Counted from the first letter of the stretch, positions 31,873 through 47,100 are shown. The stretch is 64,000 nt of DNA from Hypanus sabinus (GCF_030144855.1 NC_082721.1:42904001-42968000); one strand, 5' to 3'. The notes: generated by a model not told the origin, from the sequence alone. Program-made: numbers and translations.

Positions 31873-34015
31873 GGTAGGTGTGTTCCTGAAGATTGCTGGA
31901 GAAAATTAAAATGTCATCCAAATAAACAAATATGAAGCGGTTAATGAAATCTCTAAGGACATTGTTTATCAGAGCTTGAAACAGCGGCGGCATTGGTGAG
32001 GCCGAATGGCATGACCAGGTATTTGAAGTGACCAAGAGGGGTGTTGAACACAGTTTTCTTATCATCTCCCTCCCTTATCCTGACCAGATGATAGGCACTT
32101 TGTAGGTCCAACTTGGAGAAGATGGTGGCTCCCTGAAATGGTTCGAAAGCAGAGTTGAGAAGGGGCAGTGGATATGTGTTGTTTTGACCACAACACCTGC
32201 AGTGCACTTTGTGTTTGATATTTGCTCTTTATGGTTATGCTATTTAGGCCTCGGTAGTCAATCATTGGCGCAGTGAGCAGTCCTTCTTTGGAATGGGATG
32301 AGGGCCGGATAATGCCTGCTGCGAGAGATTCATTTAAGTATGCCTCCATTGCCTCCCTTTTTTTGGCCGGGACAAGCTGACTGGTGGGAAGAGGGGCCCC
32401 GGGGAGAAGGTCAATTGCGCAATCATGAGGGCGGTGTGGAGGCAGGGAAATGGCCTGTTGTTTGCTGAATACTTCTCCCAGATCGTGGTACTCTGCTGGA
32501 ACCTTGGATAGGTCGGGGGTCTCAGCTGCAAATGAGGTCACCTTGTCTTTCATAGGGGAAAGGGCCGATTGAAGACGTGGAGTGACAGAGTGGGCTCCAG
32601 CTGTCTATCTTCCCAGTAGACCAGTCAATGTGAGGATTATGTTGGACCAACCACGGATACCCAAGAACTATAGGAGCTTGAGGGGAGGGAATTAAATTAA
32701 ATTGTACTTGCTCCCGATGGTTCCCGGAGAGAATTAGAGACAGGGTGGTGTGCAGTGTGTGACCTGGGCCAGAAGTCTACCGTCCAGCGCCTGGGCCTCC
32801 AGTGGGTCACTCAACGGCTCCAGAGGATTTCCGGCCTGGGAAACTATGTCTTCATCCAGAAGATTGCCCTCAGCACCGGAGTCCATTAGAGCTGACAGAG
32901 GCAGGGATTGTTTGTTGTAACATAAAGTTGCCAGGATCTGCATCCGGGTTCTGGGAACGGAAGGGAACCCTTTCTACTGGTGAGCCTTCCTTCTTTGGCC
33001 GAAGGGGACAGGTAACTTGGAAGTGGCCGGACTGGCTGCAATATAGACACTCAACTGTTCCCAATCTCCGGAATCGTTCTGTGGGGATGAGGCTGTTCTG
33101 TCCCAGCTGCATGAGTTCCTCTCCCGGGAAGGTGGAAGTGGCTGGACTGGGAGCTACTCTTGGAGCAGGAGGAGGAAAGGGATTTGTTCTTGTGGGAGGC
33201 GGAAACGAGTGCCGTGGAGTGGCCAATGGTGGTGAACGACCACATCTTTCCGTATGACGTTCTCGAAGATGGTTGTCCAGACTGGTGGCTAGGGAGATCA
33301 ATGCATCCAGGCTGTCAGTGTCATCCCTTGCTGCCAACTCGTCCTTCACCATGTCACTGAGGCTATTCTGGAAAACCCCTTGGAGTGCCTCATCGTCCCA
33401 CCTCGAGTCGGCCGCTAACATCCGGAACTCCACGGAATACTCGGCGACACTACGGGAGCCCTGACGGAGGGTGAGTAGACACTTAGCGGCATCTTTACCA
33501 TGGACGAGGTGATCAAAGATCTTTCTCATCTGTGATAAAGGTGGGGAATGACGAGAAGATATCCAGCTGATTATTCCAGACTGCCGTAGCCCACTCTAAG
33601 GCATTTCCCCGCAACAACCCTATGATGTAAGCTACCTTGGACTTGTCTGTGGAGTAAGTGGATGAATGCTGATCGAAAACCAAGGAATATTGCAGAAGGA
33701 AGGCCCGGAACTTCCCCAAATCCCCAGCGTTGTGCTCCGGTTCAGGTATGTGTGGCTCTCTTGGCTGATGCATAGGGGGTCGCCACTACAGACTGTCTGG
33801 ATTGGTTTGACTGAGTTCCAGGAGAGGATGGGATAAGATTAGTGGATACACAATCCACCTGGTCATCGATCTTTGTTATGTTAGCAGACAGGGAACGGAG
33901 GTTGTCCATGACATCCCGGAGGAGTTGATCGTGTAGACCCAGAAGGGAGACCTGGCTGGCAAGGACTTGTTGCAGAGTCTTCATGTCCACTGGGTCCATA
34001 GTGGCCAGTTCATTC

Positions 34016-34418
34016 TGTTGCAATGAGTGACTGGAGTGAAGCCAAGTGCAGGACACAGGCACGGAGATTGAGTTTGCATGTGTTACATGGGCGTAAATGC
34101 TGAACAGCAAGCAAGAGGGATCTTGACACGGAACTTTTGACTCAAAGAAACTCATAGGTAACCTTTGAAACTGAAGCTAAACTTAGAACGAATGGTTCTA
34201 AGCGGTCGGGAAACATAGTTTACTCACAGGAAAAAAGACCAACAAACTGGCGACTAGTGGTTGTGACATAGAGGTTCTTACACTGAGTTTTTGAAGGAAA
34301 CCAGGTGTGCCATCATTAAAGACAATTGGAAGCAATTTGGGAAATTAACGATCGGGATCATGGCATAATCAAAGAAAATTAAGAGCAAGATAGGGAATTA
34401 ACGATCGGGACCATGACA
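34016..34418 (-). repeat. 5' LTR of the sushi-type element
   Basis: 403 bp, followed on the minus strand by a non-tRNA PBS (34000-34015) and the gag ATG. Confidence 0.9.
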
Positions 34419-36801: not shown

Positions 36802-37124
36802 TTAACAGCTGGATTGTGTGACTGTTGCGGATATTGTCGAGGCTTCTCCTTGTTGAACTGAGCAGGAGTACCTCTTCCCACTGCTCCAGTCTGCGCCGGG
36901 CACCGTCAGGTAGCTGCTGAGACTGAAGGTTTTGTCCGCGTTCTGAGTCACCCCGCTGGTTTGCACCTCACTGCTCGTCGGACTGTCCTTCACTGTCCAG
37001 CTGACGACAGGGAAGCCTATCGACAATTTACTGACCAGGCAAAGTAAGGTGCCCGATCCTCTAGCCGAGATCTCCTCGGCTGACGGGCCAAGTAGTTTCA
37101 CTGAAGGGTCCGGGATGTGCTGAG
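36802..37124 (-). CDS. Immunoglobulin light-chain constant exon (C1-set), probably sigma isotype; reading frame open
   Basis: Acceptor ttctcgttccAG at 37126-37125, phase 1. Encodes PDPSVKLLGPSAEE..TLLCLVS..WTV..FSLSSYLTV..W..YSC..SSC-TAA, with both Cys, the Trp and the terminal inter-chain Cys. Confidence 0.9.
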
Positions 37125-38258
37125 CTGGAACGAGAACAAAAGAAACGTGTTTCAAGATGCGGAATAACTTCCATTAGTTCACAGTTTTTCAGAATCATGA
37201 CTAAAAGGTTTCAGCTTCATTGAGTGGGGCCCAGAGTCTCAGGGAGGGACAGGACAGTGCCCATGGGGGGCAGTACATATTGATCAACACGCAACAACTA
37301 GAGACCTGCTCCAACCGGTGAGGCTTTCTGGCGCAGAGTCGTTCCGGAATTGAAGACCCAAGGACATCGAAGAGCCCCGGAGTAGTTTAATGTGCCCACT
37401 CTTCGTGCCACCCGTGAAACGTTGCTCCTCATCCCTCCACCCCACCATTAATTGCTCCGCCGCTGTTGGGGGGTTAAACACCTCACAATCTGCTTTGCCC
37501 CAGAGGGCGAGGGCTCCGATTGCGCGGTCCTGAGCTCCAGGGAGCCGGGCGGGGCAGGTCGCTCTGTGATCTGTGATGTCGATGATTCGGCTCCCACTCA
37601 TCGTGAGGGATGGGAGGTTGAATTCTCCCCAGAATCGGAGCTCTGGCCAAAGTCGGTGTAGTGACCGGGATCGCTGAACAATGGTTTTCGGAAAGGAGTG
37701 TCGCTCAAGGGCAGGAGAGAGGAGCAAGGACTGAGCAGCGGGAGAGGGTCTGTTATCAGATGGTGAAGGACGAGAGTTCCACCCTCACTGGGAATTCAGT
37801 GATAGTCCGAGGGCTGTTTCGTTGGAGAGTCCTAAACAATGACTTGAAACTGGTCATTCTACTGTGTTGACAACCACGGTAGAATGTCCGGACCCCACTG
37901 ACACCTCAAGTCCCACTGTGTCCCTTCACTGGATCCCTTCACGTTCCTTCCTGTGAAACCACCTCAAAAACTGACAAACTTACACGAGAGCAGGGAAAGC
38001 ACCAATAAACAGAAAGTGTTAAATCATGGTTCGTCCGAAAACACAACCGAGAAAGGAAATGATTCATTAAAAGACGGAAACAATTCACCAAACACAACTC
38101 TATCAAGTAAAGCTGATGCTGGACACGAACACGATTAGATTGTAAATCAACATTTCCACTGTAACATTAGCTAGGAAATTATAACGAAAAACTTATGAAT
38201 TGCTGGGTGACGGTATTTATCCCGTGGTTATTGCAGGAGATATTTTCAAGGCACTTAG

Positions 38259-38294
38259 CTGTAATACAGAGCTTAGTCCCTGGGCCGAACACCA
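38259..38294 (-). pseudogene. Ig light-chain J segment with non-canonical splice donor
   Basis: TG GTG TTC GGC CCA GGG ACT AAG CTC TGT ATT ACA G = VFGPGTKLCIT (FGxG motif), followed by CTAAGT instead of GTAAGT. Confidence 0.9.
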
Positions 38295-38301
38295 CACAAT
38301 G
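38295..38301 (+). other. J RSS heptamer (CACAATG), separated from its nonamer
   Basis: Directly abuts the J coding end. There is no nonamer at 12 or 23 nt because LINE sequence starts ~2 nt later. Confidence 0.85.
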
Positions 38302-38302
38302 T

Positions 38303-40152
38303 GCCACTTCCAGGACAGCGGCGACACGCTGACACATGTGGAAGGGCAGTCAGGACATCACCAACTACAGGACAACATCACCTGCCTGTGCGGGTGATGC
38401 CTCCCTCCCAGATGCGTTGAACAACTACTTCGCTCGTTTCCAGGCGGAAAATGACGTGGTAGCGAGGAAGACCACTCCTCCTCTCAATGACCAAGTGTTG
38501 TGCCTTAGCGTGGCCGAAGTGAGGAAAACTCTATGCAGGGTCAACCCATGGAAGGCTGCTGGACCAGACAATATTCCTGTCAGAGTGCTTAGGGGATGTG
38601 CAGACCAGCTGGCAGATGTTCTCACTGACATCTTCAACATCTCCCTGAGCAGCGCCATTGTTCCAACGTGCTTCAAGGCCGCCACCATCATCCCCGTGCC
38701 GAAGAAGTCTTCAGTGTCCTGCCTCAACGACTACTGTCCCGTTCCACTCACATCCATCATCATGAAGTGTTTCGAGAGGCTCGTCATGAGGCATATCAAG
38801 ACCCTGCTGCCCCCTCACTGGACCCCCCCTGCTGGTCGCGTATCGTCCCAACCGCTCAACAGACGACGCCACCACCCTCCACCTGACCCTCACCTACCTG
38901 GACAAAAAAAGACACGTACGTTCGAAAACTGTTCATAGACTTCAGTTCAGCATTCAACACAATCATTTATCAGCAGCTGGTTGGAAAGCTGAAACCGCTG
39001 GCCTGAACACCTCCCTCTGCAACTGGATCCTAGACTTCCTGACTGGGAAACATCGGTCAGTCCGGATCGGGAGCAGCATCTCCAACACCATCACACTGAG
39101 TACGGTCACCCCACACCCCCGAGGGCTGTGTGCTCAGTCCACTGCTGTTCACTCTGCTGACCCATGACTGTGCTGCAACACACAGCTCGAACCACATCAT
39201 CAAGTTCGCCATCGACACGACCGTGGTGGGTCTCATCAGCAAGAACGACGAGTCAGCATACAGAGAGGAGGTGCAGCGACTAACGGACTGGTGCAGAGCC
39301 AACAACCTGTCTCTGAATGTGAACAAAACAAAATAGATAATTGTTGACTTCAGGAGAGCAGGGAGTGACCAGTCTCCGCTGAACCTTGACGGCTCCTCAG
39401 TTGAGATCGTTAAGAGCACCAAATTTTTTGGTGTTCACCTGGCGGAGAATCTCACCTGGTCCCTCAACACCAGCTCCATAGCAAAGAAAGCCCAGCAGCA
39501 TCCCTACTTTCTGCGAAGTCTGAGGAAAGTCCATCTCCCACCCCCCCATCCTCATCACATTCTGCAGGGGTTGTACTGAGAGCATCCTGAGCAGCTGCAT
39601 CACAGCCTGGTTCGGAAATTGCACCATCTCGGATCGCAAGACCCTGCAGCGGATGGTGAGGTCAGCTGAGAAGATCATCGGGGTCTCTCTTCCTGCCATC
39701 ATGGACATTTACACTACACGCTGCACCCGCAAAGCTAACAGCATTGTGAAGGACTCCATGCACCCCTCATACAAACTCTTCTCCCTCCTGCCATCTGGCA
39801 AAAGGTACCAAAGCATTCAGGTTTTCACGATCAGACTGTGCAACAGATTCTTCCCCCAAGCTATCAGACTCCTCAATACCCAGAGTCTAGACTGACATCT
39901 ACATCATTTATTATTATATTGAAATTTGTCCTCTGCTGTGCCCATTGCCTTGTTTATTATTAATTAATTAATTATGGTACTGCCCTGCATTGTTTTGTGC
40001 ACTTTATGTAGTCCTGTGTAGATCTGTAGTCGAGTGTAGTTTTGTGTTGTTTCATGTAGCACCAAGGTCCTGCAGGAACGTTGTTTCGTTTTTACTGTGT
40101 ACTGTATCAGCAGTTTATGGTCGAAATGACAACAAAAAGCGACTTGACTTGA
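38303..40152 (+). mobile_element. 5'-truncated Rex1/Babar-like LINE inserted into the J RSS spacer
   Basis: ORFs show [36 protein letters not shown] and [18 protein letters not shown]. 3' UTR ends in (GACTT)n at 40141-40152. Confidence 0.9.
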
Positions 40153-40170
40153 TTCCGGGCAGCAGTCCAT

Positions 40171-40179
40171 ACAATTACC
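40171..40179 (+). other. Displaced J RSS nonamer (ACAATTACC)
   Basis: 7/9 match to ACAAAAACC, about 20 nt after the LINE tail. Removing the LINE restores a 21-23 nt spacer. Confidence 0.7.
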
Positions 40180-40492
40180 CAGGACCATAATCAGACAGAA
40201 AACACGGTCAGACGTCTCCGTGTCAGCATGAAACCAGACTTCACACATCCCGAATGTCCCGGTCTATGAGGGACTGGCGGGGTGAATTCACCGCCGCATC
40301 GACAGACTGACATTAAACGACATCAAACACTCGATAGTGGGCGGTGGGATTCGGAAACTTTCCAAATATGGCAAGATTGCCATTGGAAAATACCGTATCA
40401 TGGGTACAATTAAAGTGGCTGTATGAAGAGTGATTGATGAGAATGTTTCCATCCGATACAACGATGTGAAGTGTATTATGTCTGCTGACCCC

Positions 40493-40520
40493 AGCTTTTG
40501 TTTTACCTTCTTTCACTGTG
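40493..40520 (-). other. V 12-RSS, intact
   Basis: CACAGTG (40520-40514), 12-nt spacer AAAGAAGGTAAA, nonamer ACAAAAGCT (40501-40493). Confidence 0.9.
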
Positions 40521-40829
40521 ATAACGAAGTACTACCCGATAAAAACCGCTTCCAGCAATAATAGACGGCAGCGTCCTTCAGCTCCAAGCTGTTTATGATC
40601 ACCTGGTAAACGGTGCCGGCACTGTTGGCTATCGACGTGAAACGGTCGCTGTTAAACCCAGGGCCGTAGGTTACTCCAGGAAAAATAGTAATAGAGAATC
40701 TATTGTGGAGCTGTTCCCGGTGTCTGCTTGTACCAATACACATTTTGGCCATCTTTGTTCCGATGTCACAATTCAGCGTGGCCGTGGCTCCTGGACTCAC
40801 CGACACGGTCGGAGTCTGGGACTCTCCAG
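40521..40829 (-). pseudogene. Ig light-chain V exon, probably sigma type, pseudogenised
   Basis: Acceptor tttttcacAG; VSVSPG..ATLNCDIG..TYGPGF.SDRFTS..DAAVYYC. The WYKQTPGTAPQ*ILYYY segment lies in another frame (40753-40673) and contains TAG at 40702-40700. Confidence 0.9.
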
Positions 40830-40932: not shown

Positions 40933-40978
40933 AACCCAGCCACACTGCCAGAGACCAGAAAAAGCACAGCGTCCGCAT
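40933..40978 (-). CDS. Ig leader exon (signal peptide)
   Basis: ATG CGG ACG CTG TGC TTT TTC TGG TCT CTG GCA GTG TGG CTG GGT T|GTAAGT = MRTLCFFWSLAVWLG. 46 nt, phase 1, compatible with the V acceptor. Confidence 0.85.
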
Positions 40979-41100: not shown

Positions 41101-41199
41101 GGCCCACTCACACTGACCAACCAGAGTGGGATCTGAACCTCTCCTTCCTCCTCATTCGCTGTCACACACGGTCAGGTTGAGACTGTCAGCAATTGTTCA

Positions 41200-44100
41200 A
41201 AAAGAACTCGCGAATGGAAAGGTTGTTCACAACCGGAAGATCAACAATGGAATCTGTTGCCCTTTTAGATCATGATATTAAAAAGGCATTTCAAAATAGA
41301 GAAATAATGGTAACTGTATTTCTAGATATTGAAAGAACATATGACTCACTATGGAAGGATGGTTAATTAAATTCTATTATGCGGGAATTAGAGGTAGAAT
41401 GTTTAATTGGATCAAAGATTTTCTTAAAGATAGGACAATAGGGCAGCGGAGTCCGTGGAAGCAGAGTCCTGGGCTTTGGCTAAGTGGGCTTTGTCGTAAG
41501 GGGACTTCGGTAAGCCTGTGTGATTGCTCGCTGAGGGGAAGAAGGTAAGGTCGCTAGGTGCTTTTTAGACTTATTCTATTAATCCAGTTCAGGTATGGGG
41601 GAGACAGTCAGAGGCGTGGTGTGCTCCGTATGCAGTATGTGGGAAGTCAGGGTCAACACAGTTGTCCCTGATGACCACACCTGCAAGAGGTGCGTCCAGC
41701 TGCAGCTCCTATCAGCCCGAGTTAGGGAGTTGGAGCTGGAGCTGGATGAACTACGGATCATTCGGGAGGCAGAGGCAGCGATAGATAGGAGTTATCAGGA
41801 GGTAGTCACACCAAAAAACCAAGAAGTAGGCAGATGGGTGACGGTCCAGAGAGGCAGGGGGAGCAGGCAGAGAGAGCAGAGCACCCCTGCGGCCATTCCC
41901 ATTAACAATAAGTATACCGTACTGGATACTGTTGATGGGGATGACCTACCAGGAATGAGTTGTAGTGGTCCTGCCTCTGGCACGGAGGTTGAACCCTCAA
42001 CTAGAAAGGGGAGGAGGGAAGAGAAGAGAGCGATAGTTTTAGGGGATTCTGTAGTTAGGGGGGCAGATAGGAGATTTTGTGGGGCAGATCGGGAGTCTCG
42101 GATGGTATGTTGCCTCCCTGGTGCCAGGGTCCGGGACATCTCAGATCAGATGCAGGCTATTCTTGAGAACGAGGGCATGAACCCAGATGTAGTGGTCCAT
42201 GTAGGGACCAACGATGTAGGTAAGGTGAGTGAGGGGGTCCTGCTTAGAGAGTTCAGGGAGTTAGGAGTGAAGCTGAAAGGCAGGACCTCCAGGCTGACAA
42301 TCTCAGGATTGCTACCTGTGCCACGTGCGAGTGAGGCGAAGAATAGAATGATTATGCACATCAATACGAGGCTGAGAGCATGGTGCAGGAAGGAAGGGTT
42401 CAGGTTTTTGGATAATTGGTCTTTGTTCCAGGGACATTGGGATCTGTTTCGAAGGGACAGTCTACATTTGAACCGGAGGGGTACTAACATTCTTGCAGGA
42501 GTGTTTGCCAGTGCTGCTCGGGGGGGGTTTAAACTAGATGTGCAGGGGGCAGGGATCCAGATCCAGAGGGTTGGTCAGAAGGAGCATGGGGTTAAATGTG
42601 TAGAAGGTTTGGGTGATCTTGAGAAGGTCATCAAAATTCAGGGTGCAATTAGCCCGATGGAAGTTCAAGGAGCTGGGTTAGGTACAGTGGACAGTGTTTT
42701 AAGCAAAGAGAGGAGGAATGGGCTAAGAATTCTATACTTGAATGCGCGTAGTGTCAGAAATAAGACAGATGAGCTTGAAGCTCAGATGAAAATGGGGATC
42801 TACGATATTGTTGGGATAACGGAGACATGGCTGCAAGGGGATCAGGCCTGGGAATTGAGTATACCAGGGTATACGTGCTATCGTAGAGACAGAAATATGG
42901 GAAGAGGGGGTGGGGTGGCCCTGTTTGTGAGGAATGAGATTTAGTCCTTAGCAAGAGGTGACTTGGGAACAGGGGAAGCAGAGTCTGTGTGGATTGAGCT
43001 GAGGAACAGTAAGGGTAAAAAGACCCTAATGGGTGTTGTGTACAGGCCCCCAAACAGTAGCGTGGATATTGGGTACAAGTTGATTAGGGAGTTAACATTG
43101 GCATGTGCTAAAGTAATGTAGTCGTTATGGGAGATTTCAACATGCAGGTGAACTGGGAGAATCAGGTAGGTGCTGGACCCCAGGATAGGGAGTTTGTGGA
43201 GTGTCTAAGGGATGTATTTTTGGAACAGCTTGTGCTTGAGCCAACCAGGAACGAGGCTATTTTGGACTTGGTGATGTGTAATGAACAGGAATTGATAAGT
43301 GATCTTGAAGTAAAGGAGCCATTAGGAAGTAGTGATCATAACATGATAAGTTTTTATCTACAATTTGAGGGATAAGGGCAGATCAGAGGTGTCAGTGTTG
43401 CAATTAAATAAAGGAGACTACGGAGCCATGAGGGAAGAGCTGGCCAAAGTTAAATGGGCGGATGCCCTGGCAGGAAAGACAGTGGATCAGCAGTGGCAGA
43501 TATTCTTGGGCATAATACAAAAGATGCAAAAGCAGTTCATTCCAATGAGAAGGAAGGATTCAAAGAGGGGGAAGGGGCCACAGTGGTTGACAAAAGAAGT
43601 CAGAGATTGTATAGCATTAAAGAAAAATAAGTATAACAGGGCTAAGATGAGTGGGAATACAGATGATTGGGAAAGTTTTAAGGAGCAGCAGATCTTAACT
43701 AAAAAAGCAATACGGAGAGAAAAAATCAGGTCTGAGCTCAGTCTTGCCAGGAATATAAAAGGGGATAGCAAAAGCTTTTTAGCTATGTGAAGAGAAAGAA
43801 GATAGTTAAGAACAATGTTGGCCCCTTGAAGAATGAATTGGGAGAAATTGTTATGGGAAACAGGGAAATGGCAACAGAATTTAATGCGTACTTTAGATCT
43901 GTCTTCACCAGGGAGGACACAAGCAATCTCCCAGATGTATGGATGGGCCAGGGTCATAAGATATCAGAGGAATTGAGACAGATTGACATTAGGAAAGAAA
44001 CTGTGATGAGTAGACTGGTAGGACTGAAGGCTAATAAATCCCCGGGTCCAGATGGTCTGCATCCGAGGGTTCTGAAAGAGGTGGCTCAGGAAATTGCGGA

Positions 44101-47100
44101 TGCATCGGTAATCATTTTCCAATGTTCCTTAGATTCAGGATCAGTTCCTGAAGGTTGGAGAGTGGCTAATGTTATCCCACTTTTCAAGAAGGGAGGGAAG
44201 GAGAAAACGGAGAACTATCGCTCTGTTAGCCTAACGTCAGTCGTGGGGAAGATGCTTGAGTCCATTATTAAGGACGAAATAGTGGCACATCTAGATGGCA
44301 GAAATAGGATTAGGCCGAGCCAGCATGGATTTACCAAGGGCAAATCATGCTTGACTAATCTGTTGGAGTTTTTTGAGGGTGTAACAAGGATGTTAGACGA
44401 GGGTAAGCCAGTGGATGTTGTATACCTAGATTTTCAGAAGGCATTCGATAAGGTGCCACATAGGAGATTGGTGAGTAAAATCAGAGCTCATGGCATTGGG
44501 GGGCAGGGTTTCAACATGGATAGAAAACTGGTTGGCAGATAGAAAGCAAAGGGTAGCAGTGAATGGGTGTTTCTCGGACTGGCTGGAGGTGACTAGTGGG
44601 GTACCACAGGGCTCTGTATTGGGACCACAGCTCTTTACGATTTATGTCAATGATTTAGATGAGGGCATTGAAAACTATATCAGCAAGTTTGCTGATGATA
44701 CTAAACTGGGTGGCAGTGTGACATGTGAAGAGGACGTTAGGAGAATACAGGGAGACTTGGATAGGCTGGGTGAGTGGGCAGATACTTGGCAGATGTCATT
44801 CAATGTGAATAAATGTGAAGTTATCCACTTTGGAAGCAGGAACAAGAGGGCAGAGTATTGTCTGAACGGTGTAGAGTTAGGTAAGGGAGAAATGCAAAGA
44901 GACCTAGGAGTCCTAGTTCACCAGTCAATGAAGGTGAATGAGCAAGTGCAACAGGCAGTGAAGAGGGCAAATGGAATGTTGGCCTTTGTTACAAGGGGAA
45001 TTGAATACAAGAGCAAGGATGTCCTTTTGCATTTGTACAGCGCCCTGGTGAGACCACACCTGGAATATTGTGTACAGTTTTGGTCTCCAGGTTTAAGGAA
45101 GGACATTCTGGCAGTTGAGGAAGTGCAGCGTAGATTCACTAGGTTGATTCCTGGGATGGCAGGGCTGTCTTACGTGGAGAGATTGGGCTTGTACACGCTG
45201 GAATTGAGGAGATTGAGAGGGGATCTGATTGAAACGTTTAAGATAATTAAAGGATTTGATAGGATTGAGGCAGGAAATATGTTCCAGATGCTGGGAGAGT
45301 CCAGTACCAGAGGGCATGGATTGAGAATAAGAGGTCAGTTATTTAAAACAGAGTTGAGGAAGAGCTTCTTCTCCCAGAGAGTTGTGGAGGTGTGGAATGC
45401 ACTGCCTCGGAAGACGGTGGAGGTCAATTCTCTGGATGCTTTCAAGAAGGAGCTAGATAGATATCTGATGGATAGGGGAATCAAGGGATATGGGGACAAG
45501 GCAGGGACTGGGTATTGATAGTGAATGATCAGCCATGATCTCAGAATGGTGGTGCAGACTCGAGGGGCCAAATGGTCTACTTCTGCACCTATTGTCTATT
45601 GTCTAATTCATGTAAGAATAGGCGGAACAAGCTCCAAGTCAGTTAAAATAGATAATGGTACCCCTCAAGGAAGCGTCATTAGTCCAGTTCTTTTCAATGT
45701 CATAAATAAACAATATCTTTGAGCAGGTAGGGACAGGACTTGGCAATTCATTGTCTGCAGACGACGGTGCAATCTGGAAAAGAGGAAGAGACGTCAAGTA
45801 TATATTAAAGCAGGTACAAAAGGCTTTAAGATCAGTTGAAATCTGGGCAAACAAATGGGGTTTCAGGATTTCTGCTTCTAAGTCCAAATATATGATTTTT
45901 GGCTTTAGAAGAAAGATTCCTGATTGTGAATTGTGTCTATATGATTCTCCATTAAAAAGAGTCAAGGTATTCAAGTTTTTAGGTGTCTGGTTTGATGAAA
46001 GACTTCCTTGGAGGGTTCATATAGATAAAACAATTGGAAAGTGTGAGAAAGTTTTAAATGTTATGAGAAGTATTGCTGGATGTGACTGGGGAGCAGGGCG
46101 GGAAACTATGTACTTAATATATCTAGCTATGATTAGATCAGTGTTTGATTATGGTTGTATTGCTTATAGTTCTGCTGCTATGGCAGTGCTTGAAAAATTA
46201 GACATTGTGCAGTCCAAAGCACTTAGACTCTGTTGTGGAGCTTTCAGAACATCAGTTCCCTGCATTATGTGTGAAGATGGGAGAAGCGCCTCTACATTTA
46301 AGACGAGTTAAGTTGGGCCTGCAATATTTTGTAAAACTAAATGGCTTCAATCACAGCTGTCCATCAAAATGTGTTTTGCAGCAGATGTTGGAGTGCCAAA
46401 GTAAAATTAAAAGATATCCATTTTTAGATTTGGTTAATATCTGGACTGTGAAATTGAAACTGATTGAGAAAGACATAGCTGACCAAATTTGCATGCCACC
46501 TGTTCCTTTTCCGCTTTTGCCAGAATTAGAAGTAGACCTATTCCTCCTTTTTCATCTTCAAGGAAGCAAAGCAATTTCAACAGAGTTGATCATAAATGAA
46601 TATTTAAATAATAAATGGGGATCTTATCTGAAGATTTTTACTGATGGCTCAGTGGACCCAGAGAGCAGAAAGGCAGGATTTGGGATGTACTTGTCTCAAC
46701 TTGGAGTTGGGTTTGGTCACCGGGTTTCAGATGGTGTTTGTCTTTGCAACAGAATTGTTAACAATCCTCTGGGCCTTATGGTGGATAGAAAACTCTCAAC
46801 CATGCAGGGTTGTCATCTGTTCAGATTCTGCTGCTGTCTTAGAGGCTACAAAAGGTAATAAATCAAAAGCTCACCCTGACATAGTTAGTTTTGTTTAGAG
46901 TAGGGAAGATGGGTTGTGAAGTCAGATTTACATGGATACCTGGGCATGCTGGGGTGGAGGGAAATAAAATTGTGGATGGCATTGCAAAGTCTTCCTTACA
47001 GAACGGGCAAGTAGGAATTAGAATACCCCTAAGCAGAGCAGAATTGACAAGTAGGATAAAAAAGGCACAGAGAAGAAATGGCATGAGGATTGGAAAAATG

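What the first reader, a model, noticed from the sequence alone, without database searches (positions are those of the whole stretch)
38295..40179. A LINE inserted inside the J recombination signal, pulling heptamer and nonamer 1.85 kb apart
Seen: heptamer CACAATG (38295-38301), then ~2 nt, the 5'-truncated LINE (38303-~40152), ~19-21 nt, and nonamer-like ACAATTACC (40171-40179). Excising the LINE restores a 21-23 nt spacer, depending on how the TG/GA junction bases are assigned; only a 23-RSS fits, complementing the V 12-RSS. Known: RAG needs correct heptamer-nonamer spacing. Inferred: this one insertion locks the cluster in germline configuration, a neat way for a transposon to silence an antigen-receptor locus without touching coding DNA.
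Basis: partly seen in the sequence, partly recalled or inferred. Interest (0 to 1): 0.8.

Follow-up and report, generated by a model that had tools for sequence, protein, structure and literature searches.

The report
LINE splits J recombination signal
An old jumping-gene copy really did land inside the 23-letter recombination signal of one antibody light-chain J segment in a cartilaginous fish, but that gene cluster is a many-times-broken pseudogene, so this is a tidy example of ordinary gene decay, not a special silencing mechanism.

Summary
On the minus strand lies an Ig light-chain V-J-C minicluster. A 5'-truncated, decayed LINE (38304-40150/52, + strand) sits between the J heptamer (38295-38301) and the nonamer-like ACAATTACC (40171-40179).

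Two paralogous split clusters on the same chromosome supply the empty site. Each has heptamer, 23 nt, nonamer, with homologous spacers: CACGGTG-23-GCAATTACT and CACAGTG-23-ACAGTTACC. Removing the LINE from the window leaves 22 nt, with spacer position 3 lost. The V carries a good 12-RSS, so this was a real 23-RSS.

The J heptamer is now orphaned, so 12/23-rule joining should fail. But the cluster has at least five other lesions:
- two V frameshifts
- a TAG in FR2
- a 12-nt FR1 deletion
- a J splice donor changed from GT to CT

All three split clusters in this roughly 19-member array are dead by independent lesions. The five intact V(J) exons I found are all germline-joined and need no RSS.

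The LINE is old (about 5.8% terminal divergence), and its 3' junction is present in contigs of two other public DNA-like runs. I could not determine whether it came before the other lesions.

The scan had flagged this same stretch before (s1-179814, s1-179863), and not on other DNA.

The parts
36802..37124 (-). C exon with stop codon. Open, C1-set domain, ends ...TQSSC.
   Evidence: PF07654, E=3.7e-15. It has 6 unique changes, all non-synonymous.
37125..38258 (-). J-C intron. The donor dinucleotide at 38258-38257 is CT instead of GT.
   Evidence: paralogues read ACAG|GTAAGT, the window reads ACAG|CTAAGT. K2P to the L002 intron is 0.144.
38259..38294 (-). J segment, encoding (W)VFGPGTKLCIT.
   Evidence: It is the only FGXGTK motif in the window and is homologous to 10 paralogous J segments.
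38295..38301 (-). J-RSS heptamer. Reads CATTGTG on the minus strand and CACAATG on the plus strand. One change from the CACAGTG kept by paralogue X.
38302..38303 (-). Heptamer-side stub of the 23-nt spacer (TG on the + strand). The G could also be LINE-derived.
   Evidence: LINE copies have ..caG|CCACTT; the paralogue spacers start TGG/TGA.
38304..40150 (+). 5'-truncated, decayed non-LTR retrotransposon (LINE). It holds the C-terminal part of the RT, a 3' UTR and a (CTTGA)2 tail, and lies antisense to the Ig cluster.
   Evidence: There are thousands of copies. Terminal branch is about 0.058. The reading frame is broken across at least 3 pieces.
40151..40170 (-). Nonamer-side remainder of the 23-nt spacer. 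The first two bases (GA on +) are shared with the LINE tail as microhomology.
   Evidence: The alignment to paralogue X runs through 40151 and then stops.
40171..40179 (-). J-RSS nonamer. Reads ACAATTACC on + and GGTAATTGT on the minus strand, matching the consensus at 7 of 9.
40180..40492 (-). V-J intervening DNA.
   Evidence: Homologous only to the two other split clusters.
40493..40520 (-). V 12-RSS: CACAGTG, then aaagaaggtaaa, then ACAAAAGCT.
   Evidence: L002 has CACAGTG-12-ACAAAAACT.
40521..40829 (-). V exon, a pseudogene. It has a 12-nt deletion at the start of FR1, a 1-nt deletion in CDR1 (40754/53), TGG>TAG at 40702-40700, and a 5-nt deletion in CDR2.
40933..40978 (-). Leader exon (ATG at 40978-40976). 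The ATTTGCAT octamer lies upstream at 41098-41091.

Best explanation
A 5'-truncated copy of an abundant LINE family with a pentanucleotide (CTTGA)n tail integrated into position 3 of the 23-bp spacer of the J-segment recombination signal. The host is one sigma-like Ig light-chain V-J-C minicluster of a cartilaginous fish.

The integration is inferred to be target-primed reverse transcription, with 1-2 nt of microhomology at each junction, no target-site duplication and loss of one spacer base. It moved the nonamer 1.87 kb from the heptamer.

From the established 12/23 rule (inference, not tested here), RAG can no longer synapse this J with the neighbouring V 12-RSS. The insertion is therefore sufficient on its own to keep the cluster unrearranged.

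It is not the only lesion, and cannot be shown to be the first. The V exon is frameshifted and stopped, the J splice donor is destroyed, and the C exon evolves as if unconstrained.

The cluster is one of three split relics, all dead by different lesions. They sit at one end of an array of about 19 clusters whose working members are germline-joined VJ genes that need no RSS.

The most economical reading is that split clusters of this isotype were released from selection as a class, and the LINE is one early hit among several.
For: - Anatomy and coordinates.
- Empty-site paralogues with 23-nt homologous spacers.
- LINE borders, copy number and RT domain.
- No substitute nonamer at 12 or 23 nt.
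- V lesions.
- Donor lesion.
- C exon: 6 unique changes, all non-synonymous. dN/dS is about 1, against 0.2-0.3 in three comparison pairs among other clusters..
- Array composition: 9 of the 11 clusters found with the J probe are germline-joined. Five of those have open VJ exons, and none of the 3 split clusters is intact..
- Age: the LINE terminal branch is about 0.058, against 0.072 per lineage for the window-L002 intron..
- The 3' junction is bridged by contigs of two other public DNA-like runs that differ from the window by 1.5-4% across it. One search, records 14 and 29.
- No RNA-like contig of the one run laid touches the J, the intron or the V. One search, run X12.
Against: - The order of the lesions is unknown. 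The LINE is old enough to have been first.
- The 5' junction was not seen in an independent data set.
- The ancestral nonamer (ACAATTACC) already departs from the consensus at positions 5-6, so the strength of the J-RSS before the hit is uncertain.
- Loss of recombination is inferred from the 12/23 rule and was not measured.
- The only RNA-like run laid is small, and whether it is RNA at all is a guess.
- The sigma assignment rests on CDR lengths alone.
Confidence: 0.85

Rival explanations
1. One reading: the LINE insertion was the first and causal lesion. It made the cluster unrearrangeable, selection then lapsed, and the V, donor and C lesions followed.
For: - The LINE terminal branch (about 0.058) is roughly 80% of the per-lineage divergence since the window-L002 duplication (0.072), so the hit came early.
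- The 3' junction is shared with contigs of two other runs that are 1.5-4% divergent across it.
- V-region contigs of those runs are 6 letters longer than the window. That equals the sum of the 1-nt and 5-nt V deletions, which would fit a LINE-bearing but unshifted V. The positions were not printed.
Against: - With at least 5 other disabling changes and no way to date them, the prior that any one was first is low. It is about 0.3 even allowing for the LINE's age.
- The two other split clusters died without a LINE in the J-RSS. Relaxed selection on split clusters therefore does not need this event.
- The printout fits a single 6-nt indel better. Table 4 hid only two events, and the extra tail unit of records 14 and 29, which it also did not print, would be one of them.
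Confidence: 0.3
2. Post-mortem insertion: the cluster was already non-functional, or under no selection because germline-joined paralogues supply this isotype, when the LINE landed. Its position in the 23-bp spacer is a coincidence noticed after the fact.
For: - All 3 split clusters are dead by independent lesions, and the intact genes are all germline-joined.
- Another TE-sized insertion of about 5.8 kb splits the V-J spacer of cluster X.
- LINE and RT sequences reach to within about 100 bp of this cluster's promoter.
- The family has thousands of copies, so hits in neutral DNA are expected.
Against: - The LINE is nearly as old as the cluster duplication. That leaves little time for earlier lesions.
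- No lesion is shared between the window and L002, so their common ancestor was probably intact.
Confidence: 0.5
3. ACAATTACC is a chance look-alike, and the J never had a 23-RSS at this spot.
For: It matches the consensus at only 7 of 9, with T at the normally conserved positions 5 and 6. Such 9-mers occur at 0.21% of positions.
Against: Two paralogues carry the homologous 9-mer exactly 23 nt from a heptamer that abuts J. The V carries a 12-RSS.
Confidence: 0.02
4. Assembly artefact: the LINE was placed here by mis-assembly of a repeat.
For: The family is highly repeated, and the 5' junction was not bridged by any listed independent contig.
Against: The 3' junction is bridged by contigs of two other public runs, with 35 nt on the LINE side. 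The copy is unique in sequence, at most 92% identical to any other. Both flanks align colinearly to the paralogues.
Confidence: 0.02

Closest known systems
Pseudogenes and 'ORF' segments of Ig/TCR loci with a defective RSS. Examples are split nurse-shark NS4 pseudogenes with non-canonical heptamers (PMC2193156) and the recombinationally inactive mouse J-beta-2.6 (PMC212687).
   Same: A V or J segment is made unrearrangeable by a lesion in its recombination signal. It occurs in a multigene family evolving by birth and death.
   Different: Here the lesion is not base substitution. It is a 1.85-kb retrotransposon inside the spacer, which leaves the heptamer and nonamer recognisable. The cluster also carries coding and splice lesions.
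Cartilaginous-fish Ig light-chain miniclusters with germline-joined VJ. Lambda/type II is joined in all species studied, sigma-2/type I is all joined in skates, and nurse-shark kappa is a mix (PMC5192425, PMC2193156, PMC2192082).
   Same: V, J and C lie within a few kb. V and J are about 0.3 kb apart in split members. Most members here are VJ-joined in the germline, with junctions that look RAG-made. C exons are homogenised among clusters.
   Different: In this array every split member examined is a pseudogene. The isotype looks sigma-like by CDR lengths. My literature searches found no account of the joined or split status of sigma genes.
5'-truncated LINE insertions by target-primed reverse transcription, from families with short tandem-repeat 3' tails. 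Assignment to the L2 clade is from my own knowledge and was not tested.
   Same: It has an RT domain, 5' truncation, a variable-number pentanucleotide tail, junction microhomology and thousands of decayed copies.
   Different: It has no target-site duplication and lost 1 nt of the target. The clade was not determined here.

Membership tests
23-RSS (V(D)J recombination signal) | CAC-initial heptamer directly abutting the coding end | tested here: met
   CACAATG abuts the J at 38294/38295. The paralogues have CACAGTG and CACGGTG at the same place.
23-RSS (V(D)J recombination signal) | Spacer of 23 +/- 1 bp between heptamer and nonamer | tested here: not met
   The present distance is 1869 bp (38302-40170). 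The pre-insertion state is inferred to be 23 bp from two paralogues, and 22 nt survive in the window. It is an ex-RSS.
23-RSS (V(D)J recombination signal) | A-rich nonamer close to ACAAAAACC | tested here: inconclusive
   ACAATTACC matches at 7 of 9 but has TT at positions 5-6. The homologues are ACAGTTACC and GCAATTACT. Its activity is unknown.
23-RSS (V(D)J recombination signal) | Partner segment carries the complementary 12-RSS | tested here: met
   The V signal is CACAGTG-12-ACAAAAGCT at 40520-40493.
23-RSS (V(D)J recombination signal) | Cleaved and joined by RAG in lymphocytes | not testable with these tools
   No lymphoid DNA or repertoire data could be laid. One RNA-like run shows nothing on the J or V.
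Non-LTR retrotransposon (LINE) insertion | Reverse-transcriptase coding sequence | tested here: met
   RVT_1 scores E=3e-4 in the window fragment. In family members L036 and L030 it scores 51.8 and 61.2 bits, above the 29.6 cut-off.
Non-LTR retrotransposon (LINE) insertion | 5' truncation relative to longer copies, with a family-specific 3' tail | tested here: met
   other copies continue 5' of 38304. The tail is (CTTGA) in about 2-5 units.
Non-LTR retrotransposon (LINE) insertion | Target-site duplication | tested here: not met
   Comparison with the empty sites TG[A/G]GATTCC shows no duplication and the loss of 1 nt. This is common for some LINE clades and does not argue against TPRT.
Sigma (type IV) Ig light chain | V-set plus C1-set light chain in a V-J-C minicluster | tested here: met
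   for the domains. for the cluster layout.
Sigma (type IV) Ig light chain | Short CDR1 and the longest CDR2 (9-10 residues, IMGT), per PMC5985310 | tested here: met
   The intact paralogues give CDR1 = 6 and CDR2 = 8-9 by my count (against the criteria read). Sigma-2 would be 8 and 7.
Sigma (type IV) Ig light chain | Clusters with reference sigma sequences in a phylogeny | not tested
   No reference shark, skate or Xenopus sigma sequences were reachable. The protein search returned nothing.

The most novel reading that the evidence does not exclude
The LINE hit was the first and sufficient inactivating event for this cluster: a retrotransposon disabling an antigen-receptor gene purely through RSS geometry. 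On this reading the three dead split clusters are also the last RAG-dependent relics of a sigma-like isotype that this lineage now expresses only from germline-joined genes. They would preserve its ancestral V-12/J-23 signal arrangement.
Probability: 0.2. Interest if true: 0.5.

Novelty: new member of a known kind. Interest (0 to 1): 0.3.

Why it matters
It is a clean natural illustration that RSS geometry can be destroyed without changing the heptamer or nonamer. Two paralogous empty sites pin the insertion down to the base.

Its biological weight is small. It concerns one pseudogene in a large multigene family that turns over by birth and death.

The context may be the more useful result. 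In this sigma-like array every intact gene is germline-joined and every split gene is dead. That bears on how far cartilaginous fishes have replaced somatic rearrangement with inherited VJ joins. It also provides the ancestral RSS configuration for this isotype.

Tried and rejected
- Large protein search with the C domain: no hits. The collection seems not to hold shark Ig.
- Criscitiello & Flajnik 2007 and Shamblott & Litman 1989 are not held. Isotype criteria were taken second-hand from PMC5985310.
X was read through pattern matches instead.
- SRA look-ups: no run holds more than 36% of the sampled words, and none is on record as RNA.
- Laying four runs confirmed the 3' junction. It printed neither the 5' junction, nor an empty-site joint, nor the positions of a 6-letter difference in the V region.
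- Dating pseudogenisation from the C exon was rejected. C exons are homogenised among clusters (dS 0.03-0.12 against intron distances of 0.14 and above, and largely unalignable between distant clusters), probably by gene conversion. Their intactness therefore says nothing about timing.
- A V-region tree to ask whether germline joining arose more than once: the nodes placing the split clusters have 37-46% support, so no conclusion.
- RAG-break-mediated LINE capture was considered and rejected. RAG cuts at the heptamer-coding border, not at spacer position 3.
- Literature search for a TE inside an RSS spacer: nothing specific was found. This does not show that it is unreported.

Full report
WHAT IS THERE

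The window (G000 contig C35:42904001-42968000, in a 4.04-Gb genome) carries one Ig light-chain minicluster on the minus strand. It is the only one in the window. Its parts, are:
- octamer ATTTGCAT at 41098-41091
- leader exon at 40978-40933
- V exon at 40829-40521
- V 12-RSS, CACAGTG-12-ACAAAAGCT, at 40520-40493
- 313 nt of V-J spacer DNA
- nonamer GGTAATTGT at 40179-40171
- 18-20 nt of spacer
- a LINE on the opposite strand
- 1-2 nt of spacer
- heptamer CATTGTG at 38301-38295
- J at 38294-38259, encoding VFGPGTKLCIT
- an intron of about 1.13 kb
- an open C1-set exon at 37124-36802 (Pfam PF07654)

THE LINE

The 1.85-kb element belongs to a family with thousands of copies. The first look found 3045 and 6328 candidates for its two ends. 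The best copies are 88-92% identical over the end probes and 82-90% over the whole element.

Twenty-nine other copies continue 5' of 38304 with conserved sequence (...ccacag|CCACTTCC). The window copy is therefore 5'-truncated at 38303/38304. The family ends in a variable (CTTGA)n tail of roughly 2-5 units, and the window has two.

The window fragment gives a weak RVT_1 hit. Less decayed members give RVT_1 above threshold, plus PF09004. The window copy's reading frame is broken into at least three pieces.

A maximum-likelihood tree and a star-phylogeny estimate both give the window copy a terminal branch of about 0.058 substitutions per site. That is typical of the family, whose branches run 0.05-0.08.

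IS IT REALLY INSIDE AN RSS?

A search of the whole genome with the J and flanking intron found 10 paralogous clusters. All lie on the same contig and strand, between 43.07 and 44.02 Mb.

Nine of them (L003-L011) are germline-joined, reading YYC-CDR3-FGPG with no RSS. The closest, L002 (91% identical), is split. On the + strand it reads CACGGTG-TGGGATACCGGGCATCAGGCCAT-GCAATTACT, an uninterrupted 23-nt spacer homologous to the window's.

A search with the V-J intervening DNA found a third split cluster, X, about 52 kb from the window's. Pattern searches read it as CACAGTG-TGAGATTCCGGGCTTCAGTCCAC-ACAGTTACC, again with 23 nt.

The three signals align as follows:

| Cluster | Heptamer | Spacer | Nonamer |
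|---|---|---|---|
| X | CACAGTG | TG-A-GA-TTCCGGGCTTCAGTCCAC | ACAGTTACC |
| L002 | CACGGTG | TG-G-GA-TACCGGGCATCAGGCCAT | GCAATTACT |
| window | CACAATG | TG-[LINE]-GA-TTCCGGGCAGCAGTCCAT | ACAATTACC |

The similarity of X to the window runs through 40151 and then stops. The terminal GA is therefore target sequence, or a 2-nt microhomology with the CTTGA tail. The LINE replaced spacer position 3, leaving no target-site duplication and 22 of the 23 nt.

Nonamers matching the consensus at 7 of 9 or better occur at 0.21% of positions in the window. Chance is therefore excluded by positional homology in two paralogues.

CONSEQUENCE

In the present sequence no 9-mer at 10-14 or 21-25 nt from the heptamer matches the nonamer consensus at more than 4 of 9. 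By the 12/23 rule and the 23 +/- 1 spacer requirement (established knowledge; see PMC3308330 as read), the J is left with an orphan heptamer. It should not pair with the V 12-RSS. This step is inferred, not measured.

Aligned with its paralogues, the window's V exon has four lesions:
- a 12-nt deletion at the start of FR1
- a 1-nt deletion in CDR1
- a TGG>TAG change in the true FR2 frame (40702-40700)
- a 5-nt deletion in CDR2

Several other features point the same way.
- The J splice donor is CT. Nine of ten paralogues have GT.
- The heptamer has one change from the canonical form kept by X.
- The C exon is open, but its six unique substitutions are all non-synonymous. Its dN/dS against other clusters is about 1, compared with 0.2-0.3 in the three pairs among other clusters that I compared.
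- C exons are strongly homogenised across clusters. Their dS is 0.03-0.12, while introns are 0.14 (window against L002, whole intron) to effectively unalignable between distant clusters. An intact C exon therefore cannot date the death of the cluster.

THE FAMILY CONTEXT

A protein search with the C domain finds about 19 C exons of this isotype on C35 between 42.94 and 44.16 Mb. The window's is the first in the array. Three other light-chain loci lie on C28, C27 and C76.

Of the clusters I could read, open VJ exons occur only in germline-joined members: L003, L005, L007, L008 and L010. Four joined members are broken.

All three split members are dead, each in its own way:
- the window, by the lesions listed above
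- L002, by 13-nt and 17-nt V deletions
- X, by a wrecked J with the FGXG motif lost, a truncated C exon and about 5.8 kb inserted in its V-J spacer

No lesion is clearly shared. Relaxed selection on split clusters as a class therefore explains all three. Only one of them involves a LINE in the J-RSS.

By IMGT-style CDR lengths (CDR1 = 6, CDR2 = 8-9), and with the V-12/J-23 arrangement being compatible, the isotype looks sigma-like. The length criteria come from PMC5985310. The counts are mine, made. No phylogeny against reference sequences was possible.

AGE AND ORDER

The window-L002 intron distance is K2P 0.144, or about 0.072 per lineage. The LINE's terminal branch is about 0.058. The insertion therefore happened early in the cluster's separate history.

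Contigs of three public DNA-like runs cover the cluster with 1.5-6% differences that the three runs share. Those runs are labelled as three different organisms. In two of them, contigs bridge the LINE's 3' junction (40118 to 40249 and 40118 to 40322). Each carries five extra letters that would fit one more CTTGA unit.

The insertion is therefore not private to this assembly. No listed contig bridges the 5' junction, and no empty-site joint was listed.

The V-region contigs of all three runs are six letters longer than the window. That equals 1 + 5, the two V frameshift deletions. The printout fits a single 6-nt event slightly better.

One small RNA-like run carrying the commonest species label among the holders shows only C-exon contigs, with 2.5-4.4% differences, which I take to come from paralogues. 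It shows nothing on this cluster's J, intron, V or leader. That is weak evidence of silence.

VERDICT

The mechanism, an RSS pulled apart, is sound as far as sequence can show.

The claim that this single insertion silenced the cluster without touching coding DNA is not supported. The cluster is a multi-hit pseudogene in a family whose working genes do not rearrange.

I put the chance that the LINE was the first lesion at about 0.3. The finding is a new example of a known kind of event (an RSS-defective Ig pseudogene, a LINE insertion) and is of modest interest. The array-level pattern of joined and alive against split and dead is the more noteworthy by-product.

Another note of this scan calls the genome a stingray (s1-178133). 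I did not verify that.

Noticed in passing
G000 C35:42.94-44.16 Mb (loci L002-L011; cluster X at C35:42992648-43001930): The array holds about 19 sigma-like light-chain clusters, all on one strand. Nine of the 11 found with the J probe are germline-joined VJ. Five of those have open VJ exons. All three split clusters (the window, L002 and X) are pseudogenes with independent lesions.
   Followed up: partly
C exons of the window and L002-L011 (window 36802-37124): C exons are far more alike than the flanking introns: dS is 0.03-0.12, against intron distances of 0.14 and above (largely unalignable between distant clusters). This points to concerted evolution or gene conversion among clusters, pseudogenes included.
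   Followed up: partly
G000 C28:144.9-146.7 Mb, C27:93.2-96.1 Mb, C76:9.7-29.9 Mb: Three further sets of light-chain-like C1 exons match the window's C domain: about 55 at 36-50% identity, about 35 at 41-47%, and 4 at 35-39%. They are presumably the other light-chain isotypes. The C28 set lies in blocks of opposite orientation.
   Followed up: no
window 41190-46300 (+ strand): LINE-type ORFs begin about 100 bp upstream of the V octamer. They include a 449-aa ORF followed by RT-like ORFs, and a separate RT fragment at 41193-41548. The cluster's upstream flank is therefore TE-derived as well.
   Followed up: no
window 32870-34155 (- strand): These are ORFs resembling the gag of an LTR retroelement, for example a CCHC-like ...[14 protein letters not shown] motif. 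They lie about 2.6 kb downstream of the C exon.
   Followed up: no
L020, L021, L024, L025, L036 (C35:65.4-66.3 Mb and C2889): Five copies of the same LINE have near-identical sequence and identical 5' flanks (terminal branches 0-0.008). They look like a recent segmental or tandem duplication, not independent insertions.
   Followed up: no
L002 and L003 leader introns (alignment): The split cluster L002 and the neighbouring germline-joined cluster L003 share a 17-nt leader-intron deletion that the other clusters lack. This hints that germline joining arose more than once in the array. The tree support was too weak to say so.
   Followed up: partly
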